From contig OZ004607.1 of assembly GCA_963924565.1 (NCBI GenBank), positions 12,338,001 through 12,402,000 of the forward strand: a stretch of 64,000 bases of DNA, given 5' to 3'. A model generated the notes under the pieces. The model made no database searches, was not told where the DNA came from, and saw only the letters and a program-made list of their open reading frames with translations. The first letter of the stretch is position 1. Every line of letters starts with the position of its first letter. Position numbers and translations under genes: made by a program. Below are positions 1 to 47,700 of the stretch, one piece after another. The DNA comes from Ascidiella aspersa. Taxonomy: Eukaryota.

Positions 1-477
1 TTAAAACACTTGAAGAGAGAAAAGAAGGCAATAAATTCGGCGAAGGCGCAAAATTTACCACGAGAATCATGTAACACAACCTAACGTCAATTAAAGCCTG
101 CAAGTAAATAGGTGGCGTTTTTAGACATCGCTTGACAGGGTTAAGCGGTTGTCCGACAGAATTATACCGGGAGGAATTCAGCCCTGCGTAGATTTTTGTC
201 TCGTATCGTACTTTGATGACCCCGGCTTGTTTCGCTTGGGATGCAGTGGCGGCTTGTGCATCGCAACTTTCACCTTAGATTGCGGTTCGACCTTTGGCGT
301 AATAGTTGTTGCCGCTTTTACGCACTTCAACAGGTTTACGTGGTTCCGGTGGCCCGGGCTTCAAACCGGCGTTGTCGGCAACGCGCTCCTTCAAGGATCT
401 GCGACGCACGGTTCTGCCGTGATTCCGTGCAACGATATCGGCTGCGGCGATTTTTTGCTGCACATCAGCTCTTTCGC

Positions 478-3400
478 TCAACGTAACGCCGACTGCTTCA
501 GTGGATTTTGATGCATGGAAAAGACTGGCGCGTGCTGTAGAGGTTCTTTCACTCTTGAAGTGTTGCTGTTTAGCAACACTGGATCTCGGTAATGGTCATT
601 CTTGCTACGTTGGCCTGTTCTAGTTAGAGTGCCATTTTGAAAAGCGTATTCATCCTCTTGGTTGTTGGGTCTCTGGGAAGATCCTCTGTTGGATGATTGC
701 ATTTTTTGAGCAGCAGAAATGTTCCCGATTTGCTTTGGCGGCACAGGTTCCTTTTGAATTATTTCAACGGTTACTTTACATTGTTGAATTGGTGAAAGAA
801 CATTTAAGTTGGCTTCTCGACTTTTTTTTGTTGTACCGCATAATATCTGCGCAGACTGTCGGTTGGCAATTCGCCTCATTCGCGCTGCTGAAAACTTGTT
901 GCCTTGCTTGGGTGGTGTGGGCGCAACGATATACTTAGTGGATGATGATATTTGTTCTGTTTGAAGCGGTGAACGCGAGGTATGCTTGGTAGATTTCACC
1001 GTTTCTTTACAAATCTGCCCTCTATTTGTAGTGCGCGTTTTGTGCTGGGCAAAACCAAGTTTGCTTTGCCTAATTGAAGCAGATTCCTGGTGGTTTAAAA
1101 CGTTTGCAGAGGGAGATGTTGCGTATTTATTTTGCGTAGTTCCATTTGTGTTTTCTTTCAACAAAGATTGACGCTTTAAAATTCGTCTTTTCCGAGCTGC
1201 AGACATTTCCCTGTCTTGCGTTGGTGGTCTGGGTTCTTTGTATTGCTTAACGACACTCGCTGCTGAATATTTCTCGCTTTGAACTTTAGCTGGATTAACT
1301 TCTGTGATTTCCTGTTTTTTGCATAAGTTGAGTTCAGATTGGCGCTTGAGAATTCGTCTTTTGCGTGCTGCAGATAAATTCCCTTCGTGACTTGGTGGGA
1401 CAGGGGCCATCATCGGACCACAAATAGTTGTTTGCCGACGCGCACTTTGAATTCTCTTGAACTTTTTCGCAACACACGATTCATTACTTGTTTTTAACGT
1501 GGCCGTTGGAGGCTTATAGCTGAAGAGAGTGTTGTCCTTAGAGAGGCAGGTTTTAATTTTGTGAGGTGTTTGAGTCTGACAAGGCTTGGAGTTAAGCTTA
1601 ACAAGCTGGTCAACAGTTTGCGGTTTTAAAGCAGCGTTGTTTGCTTTCTTCGATGCAGTGTCTTTTGATGACAGTGGTTTGACATTTGGGATGGTGGAGC
1701 TTTCCTTGACTTTCTCAGGAGAAACTTGGATGGTTTTCAAACACTTCGGCGCTAATCTTTTCTTTATAACCACCAGTGGATTTATATCTGTGAATAAAAT
1801 TTGCCAATTTTAGCAGAGTAACGACAAATCCAGATATTTGTGACATTCCGATTGGCACTAAATGAAAACTGCTAGCGAATATTTTTTTCGTAAACGGACA
1901 ATATTTAGTTAAATATTTCAGGAATTTGTGCACCAAATGATTGACAGCTGTTTCACTGAATTAAGATACATCAAGCTGCTGGCACAGCAGGACATATAAA
2001 CACATGGTAGCATTTGTATATAAATGTCCAAAATTTAACAAAAATGATGACGCCTGGGCAGACCAAATTAATTTGGGCAAGTGTCGTAGGGTTTATGTTG
2101 TATAATCATATTGTTTAACTTACCACTAGCCTTTAGGATCCGTTCTTGGACTTGATTTACCTCTGCACGTTTAAGTGGAGGTTGGGCCTGCTGTGGGACA
2201 GTAGTTTCTAAAGAACATAGAAGAAAAAAAAAACAGATTAAGACCTGGTCTAAAACATTTCATGACTAAGGTAATGATAGTGATATGCAATTGAGGATCT
2301 GAGAAAACTCATAATGTGTACAAAGCCACGATTTTTTAAGATATGTCAACGAAAAAAACAAACAGTCGCTTACCAGTCACGCATGGTTTGATTTTATTGG
2401 CCGACCGTGAAAGTTGTTCTTTACAATCGGTAAGACGGGGCTGATGTTTTATCATGTGTGCTCCTACAGTTAAAAAAACATGATTTTTCTGTTTTCTACG
2501 GACCACTATGTAATAACGTTTGACACAACCGAGCCTACCGTTTTCACGAGACGGTTTGGATTTTTCTTGTAGGCTTTTAAACTTTTGCTTGTCCCTCGAT
2601 GATAATTTCTATAAAATGAAAATATGGGTAATAAAGTCTTTAGTTCTACCTGAAAACGATAGAATAAACCGACCAATCTACCTTCATCAAGTTTTCTTGG
2701 CCATCTTTAATTTTCTTCAAGTTATTTTGAATCTTTGTGCTCTGCAATAAAAATACATTAATGTATTAGCACTGAAAAACAACAACATGACGACGTTGTT
2801 TCAAGTTACCTTCTCTGTGGGGATAATTGGAGTTGTAGCGTTTATCCTTGCAGGTCGCAATCCATAAGGACGACACTGCATGAAAAACAACACGCTAGTT
2901 AAAAAGGAAAATGTATATATTTGCATGTAAATATATTTTCAATGGTTTTACTTACATGCTCCAATTGGAGTTTGTCAGTTAAAAGCTCGTATGATTCGCC
3001 TGGGACCTTTGGTAGCGGTCGATTATATCCATGACGATTGTAGTACGAATGAACGGCAGACTTTTCTGTTTTCGGAGATATGTGTTTCTTTGCTGAAAGT
3101 GCAAAAATGTGAAGATTAGCGCCGATCCTTTCGTGCATTCTAGTGATACTTATCCGGAAGAAGATGTTTGGTGAAAACCACAGACAGTTTGAGACAAAGA
3201 CACTACGAAATGAATGATTGGAGATATGTTGTTACGAAATCTGTCGGTCTCACCAGCAGATACAAGGTGTCCAACCAACAAAACGCGGAACAGAAAGCCC
3301 TTTGTTCATACAACAACGAATGTTAGAATTTAAATTTTAGTTAAAATAAACATTTACCATTGTTACGAACCAAATTCTTCGCTTTAATATTATAATACAA

Positions 3401-6298
3401 TTAGGCATGGTTATTAAGTTGTCTACTTTTTTATTATGTAAATACCTGTTGGTGGGTAATTTTCATCAGTATCCAGTTTAAGTTCTTCCTTTGATTTTTT
3501 ATCCTTAGTCATATTTTTTCGTTTTTTTCTTTTAATCAAACCGGACTTGGTTCCTTTTTCGGATACCTAAATATCGATTTAGTGTTGATTAAGCAAACAA
3601 CGTTGTTATACATATCACAAATAAACCATAAAACTGAAAATTTACTTGATATTACAAACGAGTTATTACCTTGTCTTCCTCCTTAGAATTTTGTTTTTTC
3701 GATTCTTTTTTGTACGATTTGGGATAAAACCCAAGAATGTTCTGCCGACAACTCGCCAATTCCATTTCTTTATCGTGAGGATGACGAAAGAATATGTTTC
3801 TGTACCCTTCAACGTCAACCGTGTTGTAATTTTTAAGGGAACGCTCAAAGCCTTCTTTCGCCAGAAATTCATTGTCAAGAATTGCAGCCCATCTGCTCAG
3901 CATTGGAAAGTCCTTAACAACTCGCTCAACGAGGCCAATACCAAGGGTTGGCTCTTCCACGTCCGGACACCAAGCCCAGGGATCTTTAAGGGCTTTAAGC
4001 TTGGCAGTTTTGTTTCTTTCAACAGGTAAGGTATCGGTTTCAGGCGACTCGTTTCTCTCAAATCTCCAAACCTCATTGACGGTAACTCCCCCTGTGTCTT
4101 TACGCGGAAGACTGACCATGATTCCTGCATTACGCAAGTCTTCTGCTTTGCAACCATTTTTGAGGAGAAACTTGCGCCGTTCAAGCAGCAGCCTTTTACG
4201 TTGGTAGAGGTAGTTTCGCACGTACGTCGCTTGAAATCGGTAAACTGAGAAAACATAAAAGAAAACTTGCAATCATATAGATCACATTAGCTTATTTCGA
4301 ATCCCACAACACTTACCCAAATTATCAGCGATATTTCGCAGATGTTTCGTACTTGGAGGTGATTCCTAAAACAATAAACTTGGTTTAAAACTTGAAATTG
4401 TCTTTTGATTTTTGTTACAAAACAGAAATAAAATTTTACCTGCACTTTGTATTGCACCAACCACTGATCCCCTACAATTTTGTGAACTGTTGGCCTCTTT
4501 TTTGGAGTCGTTAGCATACGACTGATCAACTCCTTACATTCTGATTTAAATATTTAATAAAAATTTACCAACAGGTTAACTTCCACTTACAGTATGCTTT
4601 ACATGCAATATAATTACCAGAAGAAAGGCCTTCCCGAAAAGGCAATGGTTCGCCTTCTGATATCAAAATTTCTTTTTGAATGTCTTGCGATGTTTTACCC
4701 TTGAACGGATAACGTCCGTTTGTAAGCAGAAAAAGAATCACTCCCCTGCAAAACAAAACAAAACTAACCTAATAACTTGAACATTTTTGGGCCAAAAGCT
4801 CACTTTTCGATTTTTTGCCAATTATAAGAATATTACTTTACTTTGTTTTGAATGTTTGTCAAAGTAGATAAAAAATCTTGACGGGCAAAGCTACAAACGA
4901 TATACGTACATGCTCCACACATCAGCTTTCAATGGATCGTACGGATGTTTGCGACTATCGAAAATCTCGGGTGCCGCGAAGCCGGGTGTGCCACAAGGAG
5001 AAGAAGTGACGAAGCTTCGGCTGTTTTTATTTTTATCGCAGCCAGCAATCGAAAAACCGAGATCGCACAGTTTTATTTGCCCGTCACCTGTTACCAGAAT
5101 GTTGTCCGGTTTTAAATCCCTGCAAGAAGATAGTATCTTACCAAATCATATAATTGGCAATACTAATATAAAAAGTGGCAATTTAAGTTAACCTGTGTGC
5201 GATATTTCTCCTGTGCAGTTGCTGGACACCTTTGGCGATTTCCCTAAAGTAATGACGAGCCAGGTCCTCTTCCATGTATTGTTCTCCCAGTTGTTTGGTG
5301 GAAATATGGTCTAATAAAGTTTTGGTCAAATCGCCCTTGGCCGCGTGTTCAAAAACAAGAAATATTCGCTTGCATGACACGAATATGTCCAGCAACATTA
5401 CCTGGAATTAAATGCCAAAAAATACCAAAATGTTATTACGGAAAAGTAAAAACAAATTTCGTTTCACTTACAATGTTAGGAACACCAAAACACTTATTGC
5501 AGTTTCCTATTTCAGCGGGTAAGTATGTGGCAAAACCTCCAATGCTATTGGCTCCAACATCCGCATAATAGATCTTTATTGCGACCTGACAAAATATATC
5601 TGAGTAGAACCGTGTAACACATGATCATCAATTAATAATATCCTGTTAAATAAAGTTATTCTATAAAACAATCATGAGGTATACAAAATGCGAAAAGTTA
5701 AAGAGTTATTTTTTTCATTATAGAATGATTAATGCATTTACTAACATTATAAATGCTAAGAACTAATACATGCTCAAGGAAAATACATTAGCCAAGTATG
5801 TATATTACGTCATAAAAGTCAAAATACAATTTGAGGCAAAACGGCAAACTGGGTCACGTGATTATTATCATGGCAACAAAAGCGAAAGTATCAAAAAATG
5901 GAAATGAAGAAACAAACTATCTTGAAATTCGCAACACATTAATTAATAAAGAATATAACCGCGTTGAACGAGATTTTACAAAGTAATAATGAAAGTTGCA
6001 AGCGTTTTTGGTGTTTACATCGTTGTTTAGTTTTACCACAATCTATAAATGAAACTTAAGTGTTGACTGTTATGTTTTAAAAGCTAGACAACAAATATTT
6101 GCGAACCTGGAGTTTTTCATCTTCTTTCCTAACCAAGTTCAGCTTCTCTGTGGATCTAATTTTTCGCTCAGTTGGTTGGGCCAAAAACACTCTTCCCGTA
6201 GCTCCGCCTCCCAAGTATTTATCGGTCATCTTGTAGCCATGATCAGCACAGATTCTTTTCTCCTTCTTCAGAAGATACTTCCTTACCTGTGTATTCAT
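478..6298 (-). CDS. TSSK-like (CAMK-group) Ser/Thr kinase with long basic repeat tail, ~1204 aa, nested antisense in an ADAMTS intron (copy A; last exon frameshifted and shortened relative to copy B)
   Basis: Phase-consistent GT-AG exons (minus strand): 6298-6107, 5585-5472, 5401-5193, 5119-4910, 4745-4618, 4540-4440, 4365-4317, 4244-3670, 3566-3446, 3299-3254, 3202-3150, 3092-2956, 2875-2810, 2741-2682, 2608-2539, 2463-2374, 2207-2124, 1787-478. Kinase motifs: [56 protein letters not shown]. The kinase domain is certain; joining it to the tail relies on my splicing. Confidence 0.8.
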
Positions 6299-6469
6299 TA
6301 TCTCGAACAAAATGCCACCAAATCGCAGCAGAATTAACAAAATCGCTTTCAATATGATGATAATAATCACTTTTTCAACAGCTCTTAATTTTGCTTCCTC
6401 TCTCTACAATCTCATAAATCTCAAATAAAAATTTTCTAAATTCAATAAATCGTTCAATTGTAACCAAAT

Positions 6470-7104: not shown

Positions 7105-10100
7105 TATTGGGATTCGAAGCTGACTTTGGCTGGAACCACTTTTAAATACGAACGGATGAACCAGATTTTGGACAACATTACTGCAGAGGGTCCAATTACT
7201 TTTGACATCGAGGTTATGGTAAGTTTTCGTAAGTTTACCAAAGAGTTTGAGTAAAACAAGAAACAACGTTAAATTTGCTCAGCAAAAACAAACTTTTAGC
7301 ACTTATTTAATGGTTTGCCATCAAGAAATTGTGTAAGGCCTACCTTATTTCTGGATTTACGATCTATCATTTTCTTTTTTCAAAATACTAAGAAATGCAA
7401 AATATTTCAAAAAACAGCTATGTGATAATGTTATCTGGTATTATCAACACGTATTTCTCCTTTATGTTCTTTCTATAACTAAGATTTTAATTAAAAGTCA
7501 TATTTACGAGTTTAACAATTTTTTATTCACTAGTTTTCGCTTTGCCCAGGTACTTTTCGTCGAACCAAACCCGGGAATCGAAATCACCTACGTCATGCCG
7601 CACAACGTCACTTCCGTGTTCGCCGAGGAGGAACCCAACTTCCGGTGGATGATGCAAGAGTGGGGGTCATGCTCAAGGTCATGTGGCAAAGGTAAGGCCA
7701 AGTCGATGTTTAAAGTAGCCTACATTCACGCAATGCTTGTAGTTTTGTTTATACATTTTTTCAATATTTAAGAAATAAATTCAATGCCCTGAACATTCTA
7801 TGACGTATGTGGTGTTTCACCAGTATCGGTTTGATTGCTGCTATATAATGCCTTAAAATGGTCGTTTCAACGCACCTAAATCTGTTTGTCCTTTTGTCCG
7901 TTTGAACTAATAATATTTGCTTTTATGAGCAAAAAGCATTAATTTTACCAACTGCAATTAAAGTGAGAGTTTTACTACAACTATTATCACAAGAATTCGT
8001 CTTTATTTGCCATATTTTTTCATACTGATATATAACGATTTGTATACTTTGTAATTTACCAATTAAGGCGTTCAAATGTCGATGGCGATCTGCATCGAAA
8101 AGAAGGCTGGTACTGTCGACGAGGATTTCTGTGACGCAACAAAGCGGCCCGATGACCGCAGGAGAGCTTGTCATCACCAGCCCTGCCCAGCCGAGTGAGT
8201 TGTGCAACGATTCAATCTATGGATTTTGCGTTTGTACAAGTTTTAATTGACACTGTAAACTAGACAAACACTTGGCGATCCTGGATTACTACGCGTAGCA
8301 CGTAGTACCGACTACAACGTTGTAGGCTTCCACGAAATTGTAAAAAAATATATACTACTGCTAGGCTATTTGACGGACTATATCTTCATTTTACTAAAAA
8401 GGTTTCCCAAACAAAGCATTTTAATACACAATAACGCTTTTTGTCCGAGCTATTTAGTTTAAAGATATTTTCATACAGGAGAATAAACTAGTCGTTCTTT
8501 ACTGGCTGCTGATTTTCGTACATAATATTTCTTTCCAAAAATATATCAATGGCCATTGTAAATATTCAGACTGTTCAATGTCTCTGCATAATTTTCCGTT
8601 AATTCACACTGTGTTGCATCAATCATCGTCGGTCCTGTTGATGAGTGTTGAACTGCGAATAATGATTACCGTGTTGCATTCGAAACGTTTGCAAATTAAC
8701 AATGTTGGTTAAATATATCAAGGAGGTTTTTGAACCTTAAACCAAAAACGTTTCAAAACTCATTTTCAACCACGAAGCGTTGCATGTAGCCAATGTCAAT
8801 CTACTTGTCGCGCAGATGGCTGGAAGGTCCTTGGCAGCCATGTTCCATCAGCTGCGGCGCAAAGATAGGCCGGCGTCGCCGCACCGTGGTATGCATACGG
8901 AGCCTGAGCAACGTAGAGCAAGTGGTGCTTAAGGGAAGGTCGTGCCGCAAGCTGCCCAAGCCCAAACGGGTCAAGTTGTGTCCGGCCGCTAGCCGACAAC
9001 CCTGTCCGATGTGGAGGGCAGGGAAATGGAGCAACGTGAGTGCAAACCCTTTGAAAAATTATTTAAATTGTTATTCTGCTAATTTTGTGACGAAGAACGA
9101 AATTCCTATACACCATTTAGGGCCAATTGAAATACAATAGTTTTGAATTATGGAAAGCAACCAAACGTTTGTGTATTGTTGAATTATATTTTGTTTTTCG
9201 TTTGTTATTTTTCGACCGACCCAACGTTTTGTTATTTAAGTATCACTTGGTTGCCTTTGTGGTAATATAGTATATAGGTTTATCTACTTATTTCATCTTA
9301 TCGGGAGCAGACTCCAAGATTACCGTTTTCAAAAACTGAACAATGTTTGACGGCAAACTACTTAGCCTTGCAGTAGACAGAACTTCGATGTTCTATTAAA
9401 TGTGTATAAACTAAATTTAAATATGTATTAATAAACCACAAACGGTGATAAACTCAATTTTTAGTGCTCCGCGCCATGCAACGCAACCGGTTCACGAAAT
9501 CGCACTGTCCAGTGTGTCACATACGTCATCAATGACGTCATTCTCTCGAAGAATACGGTGGACACCCCGGTCGACGACTTCCTGGACGTGGGCCGCGTGG
9601 GCTCCCGCAAGAAAACAAAGGATCCTACATCAAAGAAAAAAGGTGGAGCGCCTGGCGTTAAGGAACAAGAAGGAGGTTCACCTTTAAACCAAGAGGATAA
9701 CAGAGCAGATCATCTAAACGAAGAAATCCAAAGCAATCATCCATCTAAAAATCAGAGCCATTCTTCTCCTCATAAAAAACACAAAGTACCTCCTAAGGAA
9801 GACCAACATCTAACCGAGGAGGAAGTTTACTCCTCAGTGATGCTCAACTCGGACGTTGAGCATCTTACCATGAACAAGGTCCACATCGTCAAGAAGAGGG
9901 GAAAGGCAAGAAAGTGGGGCAAGAAAATGCTCGAAAACCTCCATTATGACGTCGTGGAAGATGGTGATTGTGACGTGGAACGTCGACCTCACGCGACCGA
10001 AGTTTGCCAGGGCAATCCTTGCGCCGTACCGACCAGGTATGTTCAAACGATCGCAATAGAGCTGTTTGTAGTCTTAGGTGTGAATTGACTTTTGGCACTT

Positions 10101-29058: not shown

Positions 29059-30015
29059 ATGAACTCAAGTCAGACGACACTGATGAACGTGGAAAGTTCC
29101 CCTGGTCGATTTAAGCTGGAGTGGATTTGCGCAGAAATACTCAACATTGTTGAGACTCTGTGCGTAATTTGGATTGGAGTAAACTTTATCGTGTATGGAA
29201 AACGCAACGACAAGTGGAAAATCACACCGCGACAACAGGATCCAAATATCAAGTCAAGGACAGTTTATGTCGCTACACTTTGTGCTATTGTGTTTGCACT
29301 ACTTCGTCTGGTTGCTGACCAAGTATGTTTTAATGTGGGTTATGGTAGACATAATATAAGTTGTGAAATTGTCAGTTATATTTCCTACGCCTTTTTTGCA
29401 TTATTTTACATTAGTTACTACCTAGTTATTTGGTTCAGACTTCATAACTTGTACGAGAACATCTCTTATATACATGCAGTTCAAGTCTGGATCAAGTTTC
29501 TCAAATATTTAATGCTGGTACTTGTAATTTTTTCTTGTTCGTTGTCCACTTGGATTTACGCTGACCAACAGCAGGTGATAGCATCCAATATATATGGTTG
29601 CATTGTGGAGAACCCTGGGGGAGTTATACATTGGTCGCTGAGTGTTGGACTTGGGATAGCTTGGCTTGGACAGGCAATAATGATCTTCCAATTCCTATAC
29701 CCACTTCGTCTTCACTTGCGAGGCAGAAACGCAAATGAAATCCTACGAATTGCTAAACGCTCGGCCATTATTGCAACTGTTGGTGCTGTTACAGACGCCA
29801 CAAGCATGTTACTACTTAAGTTTGTCGTGCCAAACAGCACAATTGTCACCATTAGCCTTCCCGTGTTTGATCTTGTTGTATCCGTTAACTTGTTGTGTGT
29901 TCTGCTTACTTTCGAATGCTGGCCACAAATAGTTACTTGCATTTTAAGGAAGAAGCCTACTAGTGCCGCCGCCAAACCAGGGGTGCCCCATGCTTTGTCG
30001 TTGGAAAACTTGTAA
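29059..30015 (+). CDS. Intronless 7-transmembrane GPCR-like protein, 318 aa
   Basis: Clean ATG-to-stop ORF with seven hydrophobic segments, Cys at the start of TM3 (ISCEI) and in ECL2 (GCIV), N-terminal NSS sequon. No DRY or NPxxY motif, so the family is unassigned. Confidence 0.85.
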   Translation: MNSSQTTLMNVESSPGRFKLEWICAEILNIVETLCVIWIGVNFIVYGKRNDKWKITPRQQDPNIKSRTVYVATLCAIVFALLRLVADQVCFNVGYGRHNISCEIVSYISYAFFALFYISYYLVIWFRLHNLYENISYIHAVQVWIKFLKYLMLVLVIFSCSLSTWIYADQQQVIASNIYGCIVENPGGVIHWSLSVGLGIAWLGQAIMIFQFLYPLRLHLRGRNANEILRIAKRSAIIATVGAVTDATSMLLLKFVVPNSTIVTISLPVFDLVVSVNLLCVLLTFECWPQIVTCILRKKPTSAAAKPGVPHALSLENL

Positions 30016-35789: not shown

Positions 35790-38700
35790 GGCTATCCAGT
35801 CAAAAGTAGCAACTTGCGTTTCCGTTACGAGCAGTGCGCAGAGTTCAACAACATCCCATACAGGAACAACACCTACTCGTGGCTGCCGGTAGGTAGCGCC
35901 AGTGAGTAAAATATTTAATAAGTTTTTGGCGAACGCCTTAGCACAAGTGTCATCATTTTTTTCATGAAAGGCTGGATAACTGTAAAGATTTCGATCGCGG
36001 GAAGAATATACAATTTTTGTCAAAATTTGGTATTTTAATAATCATTAAACGAAGAAAGTATAAATAACTATATAAGCATCGAAAAGTAGTAAACTTAATG
36101 TTATCACATTTAGCATGGAATTATATTGTACAACATTAGGCTACAAATGTAATTTATCTTCATTAAGGAACTATTTTTCGGGCCTAGATAATTATCTCCG
36201 CTGGCCGTATTTGGTCGCTGGTCGTAATTTGGTGACTGCTTTATTAGTGCAACGTAACATTGACAACCATATTTCTGTTCAGTCTACCCTTGCGAACTTC
36301 ATTGTTACACGAAAGCTGGTAAACGGACGTTCGCCGACCGGTTGCGCGACAAAGTAGTGGATGGAACTAAGTGCTACAGCAACGCGAACGACATCTGTGT
36401 CGATGGCGTTTGCAAGGTGAGATCAAACATGGAAGAAAATCTATTAGTATGCATGGTAGTTTTGTAGAAATATTTTAAAAAATTTAAGATTTATTCAGAG
36501 ACACCATATGCCTTGTTTTTTAAACGCCAGAAATGCATTTCCTGACTATTTAGGTTAATTTATGTTACTTGATTCAAAATGTTGTGCTTTCACCGACTTG
36601 TTTGCCTTATCCCTTGTCAACAATTTTATGTACAAAATCTTTTTACTTCTTCCTAATTATTGCTGATTATTGTATTAAACGCATTTTAGTCGCACCTCAG
36701 GTTGATGTATCATGTGCAATAATTAAATGATCACAACAAAAATGGATTATTTACCGAATTACGTTTAATTCTGTCTATTAAAATAGTTTTCTGTTTTTGT
36801 AGCGTTTAGGTTGTGACCAACGCATCGACTCTTTCGCGCGCAAAGATAGGTGCGGGGTGTGCAGGGGGGGAGATGGCACGTCATGCAGTGACGTCACCAA
36901 GACATTTAACCGCACCCGCGGCGAAGGTAGAGTGATTAACAAATTATACTTATAAAATATATGTATTTATATATATATATATATAAATACATATATTTTA
37001 TAAGTATAATTTGTTAATCACTCTACCTTCGCCGCGGGTGCGGTTAAATGTCTTGGTGACGTCATATATGTGTGTGTTTTGAACAGATGATGATAAATAT
37101 GTATGTTTCAAACATATGACAAAAATTGTTAAAGTAAATGGTCTTCCAGGCCTAACTCCATGGTTTGTTTTATTATGGTAGTAAAAGCTGAGGCGACCAA
37201 ATTTGGTAGGTCCCAACTTTTAGTTTTATCATACACATTTCTAATTCTTGTGTATGCGCCACAGCATATGTGAGTGTCGGAATCCTGCCAATGGGAGCCA
37301 GGAACATTAAAGGGCACGAAGTGAACGCTTCGGAGAACTTTCTCGCCCTTAAAAATCCTAACAAAGATGGAGAGTATTACCTGAACGGAGATTACAAGAT
37401 AAGGGTAAGTTACAGGCGTAGTTTTATCCCACTACAGAACTTACAACACAGGACTAAGTTATACGTGAACACCTTGACATTTTGGAGTGTCCTTATCTTA
37501 AAATGTTCAGACAAAGATTATATAATACTTATAATCGCATAACATAGCTTAAAGTACAAGGTTAACATTTATACATATGTATCGTGTTTTACGGCCGAAG
37601 TCCAAAAGTCGAATCTCAATATTTGATAGTCTCTTAAAGGCTTCCTATGCTGTATGATACAAGTCCCGTTATCGTTGATCAAAAGAACTACATCTCAAGG
37701 AATAGATCGCCGTTGTTGTCATGTATGACATGTGTGTGTATGTTTATTGACTTGATGCAGTACTGTAAATCTTATGCAGTATGAAGTTGTTTTGTATTAA
37801 CAGAATGCGGCAGGCAATGTTGTCAAGATTGTTTTGACGGTCCTGGTATGACTGGAGGTCGTGAACCCGAACCTAACCGCAGGCTAGATAGGCACCTGGC
37901 CTACGTGCTGAACGCCATATAATACTCTTTGACTATATAAAGATGTGCTCAGTATTTTTTCGTATAGTTTTTTTTTTTTTTTTATAAATACTGAAAAACA
38001 GATATACTTCCTCTAATTCACATGTTTTTTATTTCTAAAATTAAACCGTCATTATATTTATTAGTTTAGTTTGCCTATTTACTATAATGAAAAGTAGGCC
38101 ATGATTAAAGTGATTCTTTTTTATTATTGCACATGAAACAACAATTTTAAAGTGCGACATCAGAAATCAATAAATTTTCGTTTAACACTATAAATTACAA
38201 AAACAAAAAATCAGCAATTATCGTGAAAAGGATATCAAAAAACGACAAAGAAAGATAGAAGGCAAAATATTTGGCGAAATCAAGTTTTTTCTACGAGAAT
38301 CAAATAACACAATTAAAATGCAACTAAATTGGAAGCGTTTTTAAACATGATACAACAACTTGCGATATCAAAAATAAATAAATTTGCATTTAACGCAATG
38401 AACTACCAACACGAAAAATAAACACAATAATTTAGCAAACATCATGGGAAAAAGTTAAAACATTTAAAGAGAGAAAAGAAGGCAATAAATTCGGCGAAAG
38501 CGCAAAATTTACCACGAGAATCATGTGACACAACCTAACGTCAGTCTGCAAGTAAATAGGTGGTGTTTTTAAACATCGCTTGACAGGGTTAAGCGGTTGT
38601 CCGACAGAATTATACCGGGAGGAATTCAGCCCTGCGTTGATTTTTGTCTTGTATCGTACTTTGATGATCCTGACCTCTTTCGCTCGGGATGCAGTGGCGG

Positions 38701-41700
38701 CTTGTGCATCACAACTTTTACCTTAGATTGCGGTTCCACCTTCGGCGTAATACTTAGGTTGCAGCTTTTACGCACTTCAACAGGTTTGCTTGACTCCGAT
38801 GGCCCGGGTTTCAAACCGGGATTGTCGGCTCCGCGCTCCTTCAACGTTCTGCGACGCACGGTTCTGCCGTGATTTCGTGCATCGATAACTGCTGCGCCGT
38901 TTTTTCGCGGCACATCAGTTCTTTGGCACAACGTAACGCCGAGCGCTTCAGTGGATTTTGATGGATGGAGAGTGACGCGTTCTGTAGAGGTCCTCTCACT
39001 CTTGACGTGTTGCTGTTTATTCCCAAGCTCTTGGTAGTGGTCATTCTTGCTACGCTTGCCAGTTCTAGTTAAAGTGGCGTTATGGAAAGCGTATTCATTC
39101 TCTTGGTTGTTGAGTACCTTGGAAGATCGTCTGTTGGCTATTCGCATTTTTCGGGCAGCAGAAATGTTTCCGCTTTGATTTGGCGGTACAGATTCTTTTA
39201 AAATACCTTTAGCGGTGTCTTTTTCTTGATGAATTGGCGAAAGCATCTTTACGTTGGCTTCTGGACTTTCAATTATTTTACCGCATAATATCTGCGCAGA
39301 TTTTCGGTTGGCAATTCGCCTCATCCGCGCTGCTGAAAACTTGTTGCCTTGCTTGGGTGGTGTGGGCGCAACGACATATTTCGTGGATGGCGAAATTTGT
39401 TCTATTAGAAGCGGTGAACGCGAGGTATGCTTGGTAGCTACGACTGTTTCCTTGCAAATCTGCACTACATTTGTAGTACGTGTTTTGTGCTCTGCAAAAC
39501 CAAGTTTTCTTTGGTTAATGGTAGCAGTTTCTTCCGGATTGTTTACCAAGTCTGCAGAGGGAGATGTTGAGTTTTTATTTTGCGTAGTTCCATTTGTGTT
39601 TTCTTTCAACAAAGATTGACGCTTTAAAATTCGTCTTTTCCGAGCTGCAGACATTTCCCCTTCTTGCTTTGGTGGCCTGGGTTCTTTGTATTGCTTAACG
39701 ACATTCGCTGCTGAATATTTCTCGCTTTGACCTTCAGCTGGATTAACTTTTAAAACTTCCTGTTTTTTGCATAAGTTGAGAGCAGATTGGCGCTTGAGAA
39801 TTCGTCTTTTGCGCGCTGCAGATAAATTCCCTTCGTGACTTGGTGGGACAGGGGCCATCATCGGACCACAAATGGTTGTTTGCCGACGCGCACTTTGAAT
39901 TCTTTTGAACGCTTTCGCAACACACGATTCATTACTTGTTTTTAACGTGGCCGTTGGAGGCTTGTTGTTAAAGAGAGTGCTGTCTTTGAAAAAGCAGGTT
40001 TTAATTTTGGGAGGTGTTTGAGTCTGGCAAGGCTTGGAGTTAAGCTTAACAAGCTGGTCAACAGTTTGCGGTTTTAAAGCAGCGTTGTTTGCTTTCTTCG
40101 ATGCAGTGTCTTTTGATGACAGTGGTTTGACATTTGGGATGGTGGAGCTTTCCTTGACTTTCTCAGGAGAAACTTGAATGGTTTTCAAACACTTCGGCGC
40201 TAATCTTTTCTTTATAACCACCAGTGGATTTATATCTGTGAATAAAATTTGCCAATTTTAGCAGAGTAACGACAAATCCAGATATTTGTGACACTCCGAT
40301 TGGCACTAAATGAAAACTGTCAGCGAATATTTTTTTACGTAAATGGACAATATTTAGTTAAATATTTCAGGAATTTGTGCACCAAATGATTGATTGCTGT
40401 TTCACTGAATTAAGATCCATCAAGCTGCTGGCACAGCAGGACATATAAACACATGGTAACATTTGTGTATAAATGTCCAAAATTTAACAAAAATGATTAC
40501 GCCTGGGCAGACCAGATTAATTTGGGCAAGTGTCGTAGGGTGTATAATATAATCATATTGTTTAACTTACCACTAGCCTTTAGGCTCCGTTTTTGGACTT
40601 GATTTACCTCTGCACGTTTAAGTGGAGGTTGGGCTTGCTGTGGGACAGTAGATTCTAAAGAAAATAGAAGAAAAAAAAAACAGATTACGACCTGGCTGAA
40701 ACATTTCATAACTAAGGTAGTGATAGTGACCTATGCAATTGAGGATCTGAAAAAACTGCAAATGTGTACAAATCCAAGATTTTTTAGGATATGTTAACGA
40801 AATAAAAACAGTTTTCATTTTTGGTTGTATATTGTTATCAAATTTATTTAATGATCACATTTTAGTCGCTTACCAGTCACGCATGGTTTGATTTTGTTGT
40901 CCGACCGTGAAAGTTGTTCTTTACATTCGGTAAGACGGGGCTGATGTTTTATCATGTGTGCTCCTACAGTTGAAAAAACATGATTTTTCTGTTTTCTACG
41001 GACCACTATGTTATAACGTTTGACACAACCGAGCCTACCGTTTTCACGAGACGGTTTGGATGTTTCTTGTAGGCTTTTAAACTTTTGCTTGTCCCTCGCC
41101 GATAATTTCTATAAGATGAAAATATGGGTAATAAAGTCTTTAGTTCAACCTGATAAATGGTAGAATAAACCGACTAATCTACCTTCATCAAGTTTTCTTG
41201 GCCATCTTTAATTTTCTTCAAGTTATTTTGAATCTTTGTGCTCTGCAATAAAAATACATTAATGTATTAGCACTGAAAATTGACAAAACAACATGACGAC
41301 GTTGTTTCAAGTTACCTTCTCTGTGGGGATAATTGAAGTTGTAGCGTTTGTCCTTGCAGGTCGCAATCCGTAAGGGCGACACTGGATAAAAACAACATGC
41401 AAGTTAAAATGGAAATGTATATATTTGCATGTAAATATATTTTCAATGGTTTTACTTACATGCTCCAATTGAAGTTTGTCAGTTAAAAGCTCGTATGATT
41501 CGCCTGGAACCTTTGGAAGCGGTCGATTATATCCATGGCGATTGTAGTACGAATGAACGGCAGACATTTCTGTTTTCGGAGATATGTGTTTCTTTGCTGA
41601 AAGTGCAAAAATGTAAAGATTATAACTCGGAACATTTCGTGCATTCTAGTGATACTTATCCGGACGAAGATGTTTGGTGAAAACCACAGACAGTTTGAGA

Positions 41701-44700
41701 CAAAGACACTACGAAATGAAAGTTTGAAGACCTGTCGTTACGAAATCTGTCGGTCTCACCAGCAGATACAAGGTGTCCAACCAACAAAACGCGGAACAGA
41801 AAGCCCTTTGTACATACAACAACGAATGTTAGAATTTAAATTTTAGTTAAAATAAACATTTACCATTGTTACGAACCAAATTCTTCGCTTTAATATTATA
41901 ATACAATTAGGCTTGGTTATTAAGTTATTTACTTATGTATATACCTGTTGGTGGGTAATTTTCACCAGCATCAAGTTCTTCCTTTGATTTTTCATCCTTA
42001 GCCATTTTTTTTCGTTTTTTTCTCTCAATCAAGCCGGACTTGGTTCCTTTTTCGGATACCTAAATATCAATTTAATGTTGATTAAGCAAACAACGTGGTA
42101 ATACATATCACAAATAAACCATTAAACTGGCAATTTACTTAATATTACAAACTAGTTATTACCTTGTCTTTCTCCTTAGAATTTTGTTTTCTCGATTTTG
42201 TTTTGTACGATTTGGGATAAAACCCAAGAATGTTCTGCCGACAACTCGCCAATTCCAATTCTTTATCTTGAGGATGACGATAGAATAAGTTTCTGTACCC
42301 TTCAACGTCAACCGTGTTGTAATTTTTAAGGGAACGCTCAAAGCCTTCTTTCGCCAGAAATTCATTGTCAAGAATTGCAGCCCATCTGCTCAGCATTGGA
42401 AAGTCCTTAACAACTCGCTCAACGAGGCCAATACCAAGGGTTGGCTCTTCCACGTCCGGACACCAAGCCCAGGGATCTTTAAGGGCTTTAAGCTTGGCAG
42501 TTTTGTTTCTTTCAACAGGTAAGGTATCGGTTTCAGGCGACTCGTTTCTCTCAAATCTCCAAACCTCATTGACGGTAACTCCCCCTGTGTCTTTACGCGG
42601 AAGACTGACCATGATTCCTGCATTACGCAAGTCTTCTGCTTTGCAACCATTTTTGAGGAGAAACTTGCGCCGTTCAAGCAGCAACCTTTTACGTTGGTAG
42701 AGGTAGTTTCGCACGTACGTCGCTTGAAATCGGTAAACTGAGAAAACATAAAAGAAAACTTGCAATCATATAAATCACATTAGCTTATTTCGAATCCCAC
42801 AACACTTACCCAAATTATCAGCGATATTTCGCAGATGTTTCGTACTTGAAGGTGATTCCTAAAACAATAAACTTGGTTTATAACTTAAATTGCCTTTTGA
42901 TTTTTTGTTGTATAAATAAAAAATAAAAAACTTACCTTCTTTTTGTATTGCACCAACCACTGATCCGCTACAATAGTTTGAACTGTTGGCCTCTTTTTTG
43001 GAGTCGTTAGCATACGACTGATTAACTCCTTACATTCTGTGTTAAATATTTAATAAAATTTTACCAGCAGGTTACCTTACAGTATGTTTTACATGCAATA
43101 TAATTACCAGAAGAAAGGCCTTCTCGAAAAGGCAATGGTTCGCCTTCTGTTATCAAAATTTCTTTTTGAATGTCTTGCGATGTTTTTGCCTTAAAAGGAT
43201 AACGTCCGTTTGTAAGCAGGAAAAGAATTACTCCCCTGCAAAACAAAACAAAAAATAACCAAAAGTTGAATATTTTTGGCAAAAAACTCACATTTAGATT
43301 TTTTCTAATGTCACTTATAAGACTATTTGTTTTTTTGTTTGAAGTGTTTTAAAAGTAGATAAAAAACCTTGACGGGCAAAGCTACAAACGATATACGTAC
43401 ATGCTCCACACATCAGCTTTCAATGGATCGTACGGATGTTTGCGACTATCGAAAATCTCGGGTGCCGCGAAGCCGGGTGTGCCACAAGGAGAAGAAGTGA
43501 CGAAGCTTCGGCTGTTTTTATTTTTATCGCAGCCAGCAATCGAAAAACCGAGATCGCACAGTTTTATTTGCCCGTCACCTGTTACCAGAATGTTGTCCGG
43601 TTTTAAATCCCTGCAAGAAGATAGTATCTTACCAAATCATATAATTGGCAATACTAATATAAAAAGTGGCAATTTAAGTTAACCTGTGTGCGATATTTCT
43701 CCTGTGCAGCTGCTGGACACCTTTGGCGATTTCCCTAAAGTAATGACGAGCCAGGTTCTCTTCCATGTATTGTTCTCCCAGTTGTTTGGTGGAAATATGG
43801 TCTAATAAAGTTTTGGTCAAATCGCCCTTGGCCGCGTGTTCAAAAACAAGAAATATTCGCTTGCATGACACGAATATGTCCAGCAACATTACCTGGAATT
43901 AAATGCCAAAAATACCAAAATGATATTACGGAAAAGTAAAAACAAATTTCGTTTCATTTACAATGTTAGGAACACCAAAACACTTATTGCAGTTTCCTAT
44001 TTCAGCTGGTAAGTATGTGGCAAAACCTCCAATGCTATTGGCTCCAACATCCGCATAATAGATTTTTATTGCGACCTGACAAAATATATCTGAGTAGAAC
44101 CGTGTAACACATGATCATCAATTAATAATATCCTGTTAAATAAAGTTATTCTATAAAACATCATGAGGTATACAAAATGCGAAAAGTTAAAGAGTTATTT
44201 TTTTTATTATAGAATGATTAATGCATTTCCTAACATGATAAATGCTAAGAACTAATACATGTTCAAGGAAAATACATTAGCCAAGTATGTATATTACGTC
44301 ATAAAAGTCAAAATACAATTTGAGGCAAAACGGCAAACTGGGTCATGTGATCATTATCATGGCAACAAAAGCGAAAGTATCAAAAAATGGAAATAAAGAA
44401 ACAAACTATCTTGAAATTCGAAACACATTAATTAATAAAGAATATAACCGCGTTGAACGAGTCTTTACAAAGTAATAATGAAAGTTGCAAGCGTTTTTGG
44501 TGTTTACATCGTTGTTTAGTTTTACCACAATCTATAAATGAAGCTTTTGCGTTGACTGTCATGTTTTAAAAGCTAGACAACAAATATTTGCGAACCTGGA
44601 GTTTTTCATCTTCTTTCTTCACCAAGTTCAGCTTCTCTGTGGATCTAGTTTTTCGCTCAGTTGGTTGGGCCAAAAACACTCTTCCCGTAGCTCCGCCTCC

Positions 44701-47700
44701 CAAGTATTTATCGGTCATCTTGTAGCCATGATCAGCACAGATTCTTTTCTCCTTCTTCAGAAGATACTTCCTTACCTGTGTATTCATTATCCTCGAACAA
44801 AATGCCACCAAATCGCAGCAGAATTAACAAAATCGCTTTCAATATGATGATAATAATCACTTTTTCAACAGCTCTTGATTTTGCTTCCCCTCTCTACAAT
44901 CTCATAAATCTCAAATAAAAATTTTCTAAATTCAATAAATCGTTCAATTGTAACCAAATGTAGCATGGTGACGTAACAATGATTTTTTGTTGAGTCCTGC
45001 TAAAGTAGTAACCGTTGTTAGTTAAAGTAAAAAGTACTGTATGTATTTATATACTAGGAAACTGTTTAAATTATATTTTGGTCTCTGGTTCGGTTTTGGT
45101 TAAAAGTAATTTATAAAATTCGGTTCAAAACGATTTTGTTTCAAGCCATTTAAAAGAATTCGGCTACGGTTCGTTCAAAGTTGTATTAAAACTAGTTTGC
45201 AAGTTTTGGTTATAGATAGAGGCAGCTGAAGGTTGTAAACAAGTACATATTCGGTCGGTCTACTATGCCTTCAAAGGACACTTAAAATGCCCAAAATTGT
45301 TCCTTTTTGCTATTATTTTATGATATTCATTGCATTTTCCCGCTTTTTTGCTGTTACTTTTTTTCTGAATATGCGAGACACTACTGTAGTTCCAAAAGAT
45401 CTCAACAATTAGGGCTCCCAAACACCAAAATGTCTGACTTCTAGACCTTGAAGTTGTTGTCAATGTACTAATTAGATCTTTTAGGTAAACCACCGGCATA
45501 CATAAAATACAATTATATTGGATGAATATTCACAAAAATAAAAAAGGAAGACACCAAATTTTTTTGAAACAGATTTGTTTATTGTAGTATTGGGATTCGA
45601 AGCTGACTTTGGCTGGAACCACTTTTAAATACGAACGGATGAACCAGATTTTGGACAATATTACTGCAGAGGGTCCAATTACTTTTGACATCGAGGTTAT
45701 GGTAAGTTTTCGTAAGTTTACCAAAGAGTTTGAGTAAAACAAGAAACAACGTTAGATTTGCTCAGCAAAAACAAACTTTTAGCACTTATTTAATGGTTTG
45801 CCATCAAGAAATTGTGTAAGGCCTACCTTATTTCTGGATTTACGATCTATCATTTTCTTTTTTCAAAATACTAAGAAATGCAAAATATTTCAAAAAACAG
45901 CTATGTGATAATGTTATCTGGTATTATCAACACGTATTTCTCCTTTATGTTCTTTCTATAACTAAGATTTTAATTAAAAGTCATATTTACGATTTTAACA
46001 ATTTTTTATTCACTAGTTTTCGCTTTGCCCAGGTACTTTTCGTCGAACCAAACCCGGGAATCGAAATCACCTACGTCATGCCGCACAACGTCACTTCCGT
46101 GTTCGCCGAGGAGGAACCCAACTTCCGGTGGATGATGCAAGAGTGGGGGTCATGCTCAAGGTCATGTGGCAAAGGTAAGGCCAAGTCGATGTTTAAAGTA
46201 GCCTACATTCACGCAATGCTTGTAGTTTTGTTTATACATTTTTTCAATATTTAAGAAATAAATTCAATGCCCTGAACATTCTATGACGTATGTGGTGTTT
46301 CACCAGTATCGGTTTGATTGCTGCTATATAATGCCTTAAAATGGTCGTTTCAACGCACCTAAATCTGTTTGTCCTTTTGTCCGTTTGAACTAATAATATT
46401 TGCTTTTATGAGCAAAAAGCATTAATTTTACCAACTGCAATTAAAGTGAGAGTTTTACTACAACTATTATCACAAGAATTCGTCTTTATTTGCCATATTT
46501 TTTCATACTGATATATAACGATTTGTATACTTTGTAATTTACCAATTAAGGCGTTCAAATGTCGATGGCGATCTGCATCGAAAAGAAGGCTGGTACTGTC
46601 GACGAGGATTTCTGTGACGCAACAAAGCGGCCCGATGACCGCAGGAGAGCTTGTCATCACCAGCCCTGCCCAGCCGAGTGAGTTGTGCAACGATTCAATC
46701 TATGGATTTTGCGTTTGTACAAGTTTTAATTGACACTGTAAACTAGACAAACACTTGGCGATCCTGGATTACTACGCGTAGCACGTAGTACCGACTACAA
46801 CGTTGTAGGCTTCCACGAAATTGTAAAAAAATATATACTACTGCTAGGCTATTTGACGGACTATATCTTCATTTTACTAAAAAGGTTTCCCAAACAAAGC
46901 ATTTTAATACACAATAACGCTTTTTGTCCGAGCTATTTAGTTTAAAGATATTTTCATACAGGAGAATAAACTAGTCGTTCTTTACTGGCTGCTGATTTTC
47001 GTACATAATATTTCTTTCCAAAAATATATCAATGGCCATTGTAAATATTCAGACTGTTCAATGTCTTTGCATAATTTTCCGTTAATTCACACTGTGTTGC
47101 ATCAATCATCGTCGGTCCTGTTGATGAGTGTTGAACTGCGAATAATGATTACCGTGTTGCATTCGAAACGTTTGCAAATTAACAATGTTGGTTAAATATA
47201 TCAAGGAGGTTTTTGAACCTTAAACCAAAAACGTTTCAAAACTCATTTTCAACCACGAAGCGTTGCATGTAGCCAATGTCAATCTACTTGTCGCGCAGAT
47301 GGCTGGAAGGTCCTTGGCAGCCATGTTCCATCAGCTGCGGCGCAAAGATAGGCCGGCGTCGCCGCACCGTGGTATGCATACGGAGCCTGAGCAACGTAGA
47401 GCAAGTGGTGCTTAAGGGAAGGTCGTGCCGCAAGCTGCCCAAGCCCAAACGGGTCAAGTTGTGTCCGGCCGCTAGCCGACAGCCCTGTCCGATGTGGAGG
47501 GCAGGGAAATGGAGCAACGTGAGTGCAAACCCTTTGAAAAATTATTTAAATTGTTATTCTGCTAATTTTGTGACGAAGAACGAAATTCCTATACACCATT
47601 TAGGGCCAATTGAAATACAATAGTTTTGAATTATGGAAAGCAACCAAACGTTTGTGTATTGTTGAATTATATTTTGTTTTTCGTTTGTTATTTTTCGACC

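What the first reader, a model, noticed from the sequence alone, without database searches (positions are those of the whole stretch)
478..6298. Hidden giant TSSK-like kinase: kinase domain and Lys/Arg-rich 'orphan ORF' splice into one ~1200-1300 aa gene
Seen: the ORF track shows unconnected fragments, but 18 minus-strand exons join through canonical GT-AG introns with every phase matching. The chain runs from the kinase (GxGxxG, VAIK, HRDLK, APE, DVWSMG) through ten small-to-medium exons into the 431/531-aa basic ORF. Known: YLPAEI and PYDP..ADVWSMGVIL resemble testis-specific serine kinases (FLPREL, PYxP..DxWSxGVIL), which are normally compact ~270-370 aa proteins. Inference: a sperm or flagellar kinase carrying its own ~900-1000 aa basic scaffold or substrate tail, an architecture I do not recognise.
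Basis: partly seen in the sequence, partly recalled or inferred. Interest (0 to 1): 0.8.

Follow-up and report, generated by a model that had tools for sequence, protein, structure and literature searches.

The report
Kinase gene with stop-exon and basic tail

Summary
The exon chain is in the sequence. Stranded RNA-seq confirms 14 of its 17 introns (E1-E9 and E12-E18). The three bridging junctions (3446>3299, 3254>3202, 3150>3092) are not among the listed joints. About 13 reads lie inside the proposed mini-intron 3253-3203. Such an in-frame GT-AG bridge occurs in 278 of 300 shuffles.

The bridge region is one conserved 150-nt exon (3299-3150), found in at least 15 paralogues. In every copy the frame from E9 gives a 7-16 residue hydrophobic, Cys-ending peptide, then a TGA at the same column. 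That predicts a 582-aa kinase.

The tail exons are spliced, coding (Ka/Ks 0.5-0.6) and linked to a kinase copy at six loci. Their coverage is at least 2.5 times that of the kinase exons and rises near 3150.

Skipping the 150-nt exon (E9>E12) is in frame in every copy checked and would give 1171 aa. No such read was seen.

The TSSK assignment could not be tested. Exon-wise matches are generic CAMK and AGC kinases.

The parts
6107..6298 (-). E1: ATG at 6298 and the Gly-loop (GGGATG). Molecule ends cluster at 6347, a likely transcription start.
   Evidence: ORF and sequence; joint 5585/6107 with 26 reads and ends at 6347.
5472..5585 (-). E2: VAIK lysine and the alpha-C region (YLPAEI).
   Evidence: Joints 5401/5472 (35 reads) and 5585/6107 (26 reads).
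5193..5401 (-). E3: kinase N-lobe/C-lobe junction up to the H-R of HRD.
   Evidence: Pfam Pkinase E 2.4e-7; joints.
4910..5119 (-). E4: DLKPDN, DLG, APE.
   Evidence: Pfam Pkinase E 2.8e-14; joints 5119/5193 (31 reads) and 4745/4910 (25 reads).
4618..4745 (-). E5: kinase subdomains IX-X (MGVILF...).
   Evidence: Joints; weak MARK, SIK and CDPK matches.
4440..4540 (-). E6: end of the kinase domain.
   Evidence: Joints 4540/4618 (16 reads) and 4365/4440 (12 reads).
4317..4365 (-). E7: short linker exon.
   Evidence: Joints 4244/4317 (37 reads) and 4365/4440.
3670..4244 (-). E8: 191-residue family-specific domain with no known family.
   Evidence: 32 matches at about 30 loci in the same genome, 40-100% identity; 51 invariant columns; no Pfam hit; Ka/Ks 0.33-0.39.
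3446..3566 (-). E9: Lys-rich linker (KRKKRK). Its donor is in phase 1.
   Evidence: Joint 3566/3670 with 11 reads; depth 13-19. The phase-1 donor '..G|GT' is kept in C9, L014, L016 and L017.
3150..3299 (-). Conserved 150-nt exon. Entered from E9 it encodes a 16-residue peptide ending CICW, then TGA at 3252-3250 and a second stop, TAA, at 3234-3232.
   Evidence: Profile hits in at least 15 paralogues. The TGA, the acceptor AAG|G and the donor TAA|GTATC are kept. Identity to paralogues is like that of the kinase exons. Read depth is 11-13.
3093..3149 (-). 57-nt intron-like stretch (donor GTATCA, branch-like TAAT, acceptor CAG), mostly present in the RNA. It holds ATG 3138, which is in frame with the tail in this copy only.
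   Evidence: Conserved splice-like signals. Depth is 53 at 3111 against about 80 in E12, and no listed joint enters 3092. A 2-nt insertion in copies 2 and 3 breaks the ATG frame.
2956..3092 (-). E12: first tail exon, with the conserved motif [22 protein letters not shown].
   Evidence: Joint 2875/2956 with 62 reads. Between c1 and C3a the motif has 8 synonymous and 0 non-synonymous changes. It is also kept in C9.
2810..2875 (-). E13.
   Evidence: Joints with 62 reads on each side.
2682..2741 (-). E14.
   Evidence: Joints with 62 and 28 reads.
2539..2608 (-). E15.
   Evidence: Joints with 28 and 52 reads.
2374..2463 (-). E16.
   Evidence: Joints with 52 and 36 reads.
2124..2207 (-). E17.
   Evidence: Joints with 36 and 30 reads.
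478..1787 (-). E18: basic tail with four repeats of P-x-P-P ... [13 protein letters not shown]. The stop is at 480-478.
   Evidence: ORF; repeats; depth 37-47; Ka/Ks 0.62 and 0.48 against C3a and C9; no relatives outside this genome.
38626..44787 (-). Copy 2 of the whole unit: kinase, 150-nt exon and tail with a 531-aa last ORF.
   Evidence: the exon chain is intact.

Best explanation
This is one compound locus with two outputs. It is not a simple 18-exon giant ORF.

(1) The kinase. A transcript that starts near 6347 splices E1-E9 and then enters a conserved 150-nt exon (3299-3150). There the frame ends at TGA 3252-3250. The product is a 582-residue kinase made of a CAMK-type catalytic domain with all catalytic motifs, a 191-residue family-specific domain, a Lys-rich linker and a short hydrophobic C-terminus that ends in Cys residues. 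That C-terminus is a possible lipid or membrane anchor.

(2) The tail. Seven spliced exons (E12-E18) lie directly downstream on the same strand. They encode a fast-evolving basic protein with an RxxPxxP-YELL motif and four PxPP...[13 protein letters not shown] repeats. The KRQS sites fit a basophilic CAMK-type phospho-acceptor consensus. Most RNA over these exons does not contain the kinase exons and begins close to 3150.

A kinase-tail fusion, if it is made, most likely arises by skipping the 150-nt stop-containing exon (E9 joined to E12). That join is in frame in every paralogue checked and predicts 1171 residues.

Shown: the exons, 14 junctions, the coverage step, the conserved TGA, the linkage and the coding constraint. 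Inferred: that the short form is the main kinase product, the internal start, the skipping isoform, the anchor role and the substrate role.
For: Junctions and depth:
- 14 joints are confirmed and no listed joint enters 3092.
- Depth is 13-19 in E9, 11-13 at 3159-3235, 24 at 3122, 53 at 3111, 73-80 in E12 and 37-47 in E18.
- E9 and E18 are only 88-90% alike between the three tandem copies. Their depths are therefore largely copy-specific, which gives a tail-to-kinase ratio of at least 2.5.
- Bins 3200-3399 (9.4) and 3400-3599 (10.6) fit splicing of 3445-3300 and continuous coverage of 3299-3200.

Conservation of the 150-nt exon:
- It is found in at least 15 paralogues.
- The TGA sits at the same column in all of them. 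It is preceded by a hydrophobic peptide ending in Cys or Cys plus one residue.
- The weak acceptor AAG|G, the donor TAA|GTATC and the downstream branch-like and acceptor signals are kept.
- Its identity to paralogues equals that of the kinase exons and exceeds that of E9 and E12.

The tail is coding and linked:
- Tail-like ORFs occur at only six loci, each just downstream of a kinase copy.
- Ka/Ks is 0.48-0.62 over 390-440 codons.
- The E12 motif has 8 synonymous and 0 non-synonymous changes.
- The repeats are kept in C9.

The skip path: it is in frame, GT-AG and stop-free in copies 1-3, and phase-compatible in C9, L014, L016 and L017. No conserved in-frame ATG precedes E12. There is none in copies 2 and 3, C9, L016, L009, L022 or L014. 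This argues that E12 is reached from upstream coding exons.
Against: - There is only one RNA run. About 6% of it was read, and its tissue is unknown.
- Five joints and 31 loose ends were not displayed. The joints 3446>3299, 3446>3092 and 3150>3092 are neither shown nor excluded.
- Reads from the three 88-100% identical tandem copies cross-map. The 19 loose ends at 3118 carry the sequence of copy 3. Depth ratios are therefore approximate.
- No cluster of molecule ends was reported near 3150, so the internal start rests only on the coverage step.
- A kinase mRNA that carries a stop codon upstream of seven junctions would normally be a decay target.
- Tail-only RNA has an in-frame ATG only in some copies (c1, C3a, the L017 group). 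How the abundant tail RNA is translated is unexplained.
Confidence: 0.55

Rival explanations
1. One reading: one 1204-residue ORF through two mini-exons (3299-3254 and 3202-3150). A 51-nt intron removes both stop codons, and this is the main product.
For: In copies 1-3 the path is GT-AG and in frame. The donor GTGAGA is strong and a GTAAC branch-like site lies 28 nt before the TAG acceptor. The second stop (TAA 3234-3232) and the AG acceptor occur together, and only in copies 1-3. That could mean a lineage-specific intron.
Against: Thirteen reads cover 3225-3235, inside this intron, at the same depth as the flanking exon. No such joint is listed. The acceptor is absent in C3a, C3psi and C9, and the donor in C9. 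At 51 nt it is shorter than all 14 confirmed introns, the smallest of which is 68 nt. Equivalent paths arise in 93% of shuffles.
Confidence: 0.07
2. Two separate genes that are never fused. The kinase ends at the TGA. An independent downstream gene encodes the tail, and its promoter overlaps the kinase 3' end.
For: Tail coverage is at least 2.5 times kinase coverage and rises within about 40 nt near 3150. No listed joint enters 3092. In-frame ATGs exist at 3138 in c1, at the last codon of the 150-nt exon in C3a, and in the small intron of the L017 group. The TGA is conserved in all copies.
Against: There is no conserved start codon. Copies 2 and 3, C9, L016, L009, L022 and L014 have none in frame before the strongly constrained E12 or E12-like sequence. 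The intron-like stretch before E12 has conserved donor, branch and acceptor signals, which implies splicing from upstream. No polyadenylation signal lies between the TGA and E12 in c1.
Confidence: 0.25
3. The conserved TGA is bypassed during translation, by programmed read-through or as selenocysteine. Translation then continues through the rest of the 150-nt exon into the tail.
For: In 7 of 15 paralogues (C9, C3psi, L017, L030, L021, L009, L022) the TGA is the only stop between E9 and the donor. In four lineages the distance from the TGA to the donor keeps the tail frame: 100, 97, 109 and 103 nt. The sequence after the TGA is as conserved as the kinase exons.
Against: Copies 1-3 have a second stop 18 nt later, and C3a has a TAG. 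Three lineages are out of frame (113, 110 and 107 nt). No SECIS or any other Rfam family is found in the window. There is no conserved RNA structure. No frame after the TGA shows a coding substitution pattern. The exon is poor in A, so all three frames are nearly open by composition.
Confidence: 0.05

Closest known systems
TSSK (testis-specific serine kinase) family, CAMK group
   Same: It is a Ser/Thr kinase domain with a complete catalytic apparatus (Gly-loop, VAIK, HRDLKPDN, APE). It is a multi-copy family in an invertebrate genome.
   Different: The kinase is followed by a 191-residue domain with no known family, a basic linker and a conserved hydrophobic Cys-ending C-terminus. It has DLG instead of DFG. 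The predicted size is 582 residues or more, against about 270-370. No tree or TSSK-specific model could be applied. The best solved-structure matches per exon are MARK, CIPK, RSK, greatwall and phosphorylase kinase.
Stop-containing ('poison') cassette exons and alternative terminal-coding exons, such as the highly conserved cassette exons of SR-protein genes (from general knowledge)
   Same: It is a short exon with weak splice sites on both sides (AAG|G and TAA|GTATC). It carries an in-frame stop. Its nucleotide conservation is as high as the catalytic exons and higher than the flanking coding exons. Skipping it keeps the frame.
   Different: Here the peptide before the stop is itself conserved in length and character across paralogues. 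Inclusion therefore probably makes a functional short protein, not only a decay target. Alternative use of the exon has not been observed directly.
Kinases anchored by C-terminal cysteine lipidation, such as CaMKI-gamma/CLICK-III and LKB1 with CAAX-type ends (from general knowledge)
   Same: It is a CAMK-type kinase that ends in a short hydrophobic stretch with terminal Cys residues (CICW, VVFC, VICC, VFCV).
   Different: The endings are not canonical CAAX boxes. No lipidation was tested.

Membership tests
Eukaryotic protein kinase superfamily (Pfam PF00069) | Match to the Pkinase profile and presence of the catalytic motifs (GxGxxG, VAIK Lys, HRD, DFG-type, APE). | tested here: met
   E3 E 2.4e-7 and E4 E 2.8e-14 against PF00069. 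The motifs were read in the exon translations. DLG stands in place of DFG.
TSSK family | Kinase-domain phylogeny that places it inside the TSSK clade and not in CAMKL or another CAMK clade. | not testable with these tools
   No TSSK reference sequences or subfamily models were at hand. The exon-wise PDB search lists MARK, CIPK, RSK, greatwall, PhK, SIK and CDPK, and no TSSK chain. The Atlas gave only generic kinase clusters.
TSSK family | Compact architecture: kinase domain plus short ends, about 270-370 residues. | tested here: not met
   The RNA-supported ORF from E1 to the TGA is 582 residues and includes a 191-residue extra domain.
TSSK family | Male germ-line or sperm-specific expression. 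| not tested
   The tissue of run X3 is not given.
Alternative stop-containing cassette exon | Both inclusion and skipping junctions are observed in RNA. | tested here: inconclusive
   Depth fits inclusion (11-13 reads across 3159-3235, against 13-19 in E9). Neither 3446>3299 nor 3446>3092 is in the displayed joints, and five joints were not shown.
Alternative stop-containing cassette exon | An in-frame stop on inclusion, frame kept on skipping, and raised sequence conservation. | tested here: met
   The TGA is kept in 15 of 15 paralogues. The skip path is open in copies 1-3 and phase-compatible in C9, L014, L016 and L017. Conservation is like that of the kinase exons.
Selenoprotein | A SECIS element in the transcript. 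| tested here: not met
   No Rfam family reached its gathering score in the 64-kb window.

The most novel reading that the evidence does not exclude
The conserved 150-nt stop-containing exon is a family-wide switch. In 15 or more paralogous kinases, inclusion makes a short kinase with a hydrophobic, Cys-ending (possibly lipid-anchored) C-terminus. Regulated skipping fuses the same kinase to a rapidly evolving basic tail that carries an SH3/SH2-ligand-like motif and repeated CAMK-type phospho-acceptor sites. In this copy that fusion would be a 1171-residue kinase with its own substrate or scaffold.
Probability: 0.35. Interest if true: 0.65.

Novelty: new variant of a known kind. Interest (0 to 1): 0.45.

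Why it matters
If the switch is real, a whole lineage-specific kinase family would choose between two C-termini through one conserved exon. One C-terminus would be a membrane-type anchor and the other a long tail rich in phospho-acceptor sites. That would be a compact, testable example of how alternative splicing couples a kinase to a built-in scaffold or substrate, and of why a non-catalytic exon can be as conserved as the catalytic core.

If it is not real, the case is a caution. An in-frame GT-AG bridge between two neighbouring ORFs is expected by chance, so automatic or by-eye merging would create a false giant gene.

Tried and rejected
- Tail (443 aa) against 1.84 billion representative proteins: 0 hits. 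There is no outside homologue to show its length or context.
- E8 ORF in the word-based protein search: none. ESM Atlas: no usable hit. Pfam on eight paralogues: none. AlphaFold2 with eight sequences gave mean pLDDT 47, too poor for a fold search.
- Kinase subfamily assignment: exon-wise PDB searches and the Atlas give only CAMK/AGC-type or generic kinase matches.
- Intronic snoRNA or another RNA in 2900-3600: only a sub-threshold SNORD115 match (E 1.5). Whole-window Rfam scan: nothing. RNAalifold on 14 copies of the 150-nt exon: no structure.
- Coding frame after the TGA: pN/pS by frame is noisy (0.35-1.8), with no consistent frame.
- SL trans-splicing at 3092: no loose end is listed there, and coverage continues upstream.
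- An allele reading of the loose ends at 3118: rejected, because the letters equal copy 3.
- Earlier notes of the scan: nothing near this place. Two unrelated kinase notes lie elsewhere in the genome.
All searches were exon by exon, by reference.


Full report
**What is there**

The window is eukaryotic and invertebrate-like. It has short GT-AG introns, about 38% G+C and many polymorphisms.
- E1 6298-6107, E2 5585-5472, E3 5401-5193, E4 5119-4910, E5 4745-4618
- E6 4540-4440, E7 4365-4317, E8 4244-3670, E9 3566-3446
- E12 3092-2956, E13 2875-2810, E14 2741-2682, E15 2608-2539, E16 2463-2374, E17 2207-2124
- E18 1787-478

All borders are GT-AG and all phases match. Pfam Pkinase matches E3 and E4. 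The Gly-loop, VAIK, HRDLKPDN, DLG and APE are all present, so the kinase looks catalytically competent.

**RNA evidence**

One stranded RNA-seq run of the same species (X3, tissue unknown, about 6% of the run read) was laid on 400-6399. All reads come from the minus-strand RNA.
- Fourteen joints are listed, with 11-62 reads each. They match every intron of E1-E9 and of E12-E18 to the base.
- Molecule ends cluster at 6347, about 50 nt upstream of the ATG.
- The three joints that would link kinase and tail are not listed. Five weaker joints were not displayed, and the tool allowed only one call.
Eleven reads cover 3159.
- Depth is 13-19 in E9, 24 at 3122, 53 at 3111, 73-80 in E12 and 37-47 in E18.
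- No listed joint enters the 3092 acceptor, although E12 is the deepest exon. Most RNA over E12 is therefore continuous with 3093-3118 and beyond.
- The bins 3200-3399 (9.4) and 3400-3599 (10.6) fit removal of 3445-3300 and continuous coverage of 3299-3200.

**Paralogues and cross-mapping**

The genome is 308.6 Mb in 75 contigs. It holds about 30 loci with an E8-type domain.
- The whole unit is triplicated in tandem. Copy 2 is at window 38626-44787 and copy 3 lies just beyond the window.
- The 19 loose ends at 3118 carry the letters of copy 3, so reads cross-map between copies.
- E9 and E18 are only 88-90% alike between copies, so their depths are largely copy-specific. Tail RNA is therefore at least 2.5 times as abundant as kinase RNA from this copy.
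- The rise happens within about 40 nt, near 3150.

**The bridge region is one conserved exon**

Alignment of the E9-E12 interval shows a 150-nt block (3299-3150). It is far better conserved than E9 or E12 and about as well conserved as the catalytic exons. A profile of it finds full-length copies in at least 15 paralogues and its 3' part in more.

The following features are kept in all of them:
- a branch-like TAAC and a weak acceptor AAG|G;
- a 7-16 residue hydrophobic peptide in the frame that comes from E9, whose phase-1 donor is also kept;
- a TGA at the same alignment column;
- a weak donor TAA|GTATC at the 3' end, then a 51-57 nt intron-like stretch with a TAAY branch-like site and a YAG acceptor in front of the next coding exon.

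The peptide ends CICW in this copy, and VFCV, VVFC, VICC or VIC in others.

Its AG acceptor is missing in C3a, C3psi and C9, and its GT donor in C9. Copies 1-3 also carry a second stop (TAA 3234-3232).

A shuffle test shows that an in-frame GT-AG bridge of one or two mini-exons exists in 278 of 300 randomised versions of 3445-3093. The bridge is therefore not evidence in itself.

Reading E1-E9 plus this exon gives a 582-residue protein.

**The tail is real and linked**

- Tail-like ORFs occur at only six loci: three tandem copies, two on C3 (one of them a pseudogene) and one on C9. Each lies just downstream of a kinase copy with the same exon order.
- Ka/Ks of E18 is 0.62 against C3a and 0.48 against C9. 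The ORF stays open over more than 400 codons.
- The second half of E12 ([22 protein letters not shown]) has eight synonymous and no non-synonymous differences between c1 and C3a. It is recognisable in C9.
- E18 carries four repeats of P-x-P-P, six or seven residues, then [13 protein letters not shown]. These repeats are kept in C9 while the spacers diverge.
- From general knowledge, RxxPxxP is a class I SH3-ligand pattern. Hydrophobic(-5)/basic(-3)-x-x-Ser fits CAMK-type substrates.
- The tail has no relatives among 1.84 billion representative proteins and no Pfam family.

**How kinase and tail may be joined**

Joining E9 directly to E12, which skips the 150-nt exon, is in frame, GT-AG and stop-free in copies 1-3. 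It is phase-compatible in C9, L014, L016 and L017. It predicts 1171 residues.

Phase compatibility alone is weak evidence: it has a one-in-three chance and is then inherited. More telling is that no conserved ATG precedes the constrained E12 sequence.
- ATG 3138 is in frame only in copy 1. A 2-nt insertion breaks the frame in copies 2 and 3.
- C3a has an ATG as the last codon of the 150-nt exon.
- The L017 group has one in the small intron.
- C9, L016, L009, L022 and L014 have none.

So E12 is most simply translated from upstream exons in at least some copies. Against this, the RNA shows most tail RNA without kinase exons.

I therefore favour a compound locus with three parts: a short kinase as the main kinase product, an abundant tail-only RNA from an internal start, and a fused isoform by exon skipping. 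The fused isoform is plausible but unobserved.

**Alternatives examined**

- Read-through or selenocysteine at the TGA. Seven of 15 copies have no other stop before the donor, and four lineages keep the frame. Against it, this copy has a second stop and three lineages are out of frame. There is also no SECIS or other Rfam hit, no conserved structure and no coding signature after the TGA. The exon is poor in A, so open frames there are cheap.
- An intronic small RNA: nothing significant.

**Family assignment**

Searched exon by exon, the kinase matches CAMK/AGC-type kinases best: MARK, CIPK, RSK, greatwall, phosphorylase kinase, SIK and CDPK. No TSSK chain is listed and no subfamily model was available. 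The TSSK call stays a recalled resemblance.

The compact TSSK architecture is not met. The E8 domain has no Pfam match, no word-search relatives, no Atlas hit and only a low-confidence model.

All searches used single exons by reference. Joining was done only inside scripts, to check phases and stops.

**Verdict**

The single giant ORF as drawn is not supported. The notable feature is the conserved stop-containing exon between the kinase and its variable tail across a large paralogous family.

Noticed in passing
window 38626-44787 (-) and G000:C1:12409316-12415170 (L011): The whole kinase, 150-nt exon and tail unit is triplicated in tandem at spacings of about 38.5 and 32.4 kb. Kinase exons are 96-100% identical but E18 only 88%. 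Copies 2 and 3 are also expressed: reads with their letters cross-map onto copy 1.
   Followed up: partly
window about 590-610 (-) in E18: Copy 1 is frameshifted relative to copies 2 and 3 and C3a. Its last ORF is 431 aa (443 codons open) against 531 aa (543 open). The ancestral frame continues in another frame of copy 1 down to about 179. RNA depth is low there (4-7 in 400-799).
   Followed up: partly
window 3670-4242 (-) and about 30 other loci of G000: A 191-residue domain follows the kinase domain. It has 51 invariant columns among 8 paralogues, no Pfam family, no relatives found outside this genome, and a low-confidence structure model.
   Followed up: yes
window 2956-3021 (-), E12: The motif [22 protein letters not shown] is under strong purifying selection. 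It reads like a class I SH3 ligand (RxxPxxP) followed by a YxxL site.
   Followed up: partly
L020 (G000:C3:22018000-22027999, -): A pseudogene copy of the unit, with stops in E8 and in the tail. Even so, its 150-nt exon is 86% identical to copy 1 and has the TGA as its only stop in the E9 frame.
   Followed up: partly
window 7595-7771 (+): An ORF fragment with a weak thrombospondin type 1 repeat match (TSP1_ADAMTS, E 6e-4). It probably belongs to a neighbouring plus-strand gene.
   Followed up: partly
window 29059-30015 (+) and 61394-62350 (+): Two 318-aa ATG ORFs lie 32.3 kb apart, inside the duplicated segments. The first has no Pfam match.
   Followed up: partly
window 3150-3152 (-) and the same column in 15 paralogues: The last three bases of the 150-nt exon are always a stop triplet (TAA 13 times, TGA twice) in the frame that is open across the whole exon in copies 1-3 and C3a. 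It is unclear whether this reflects a second coding frame or only the splice-donor context.
   Followed up: partly
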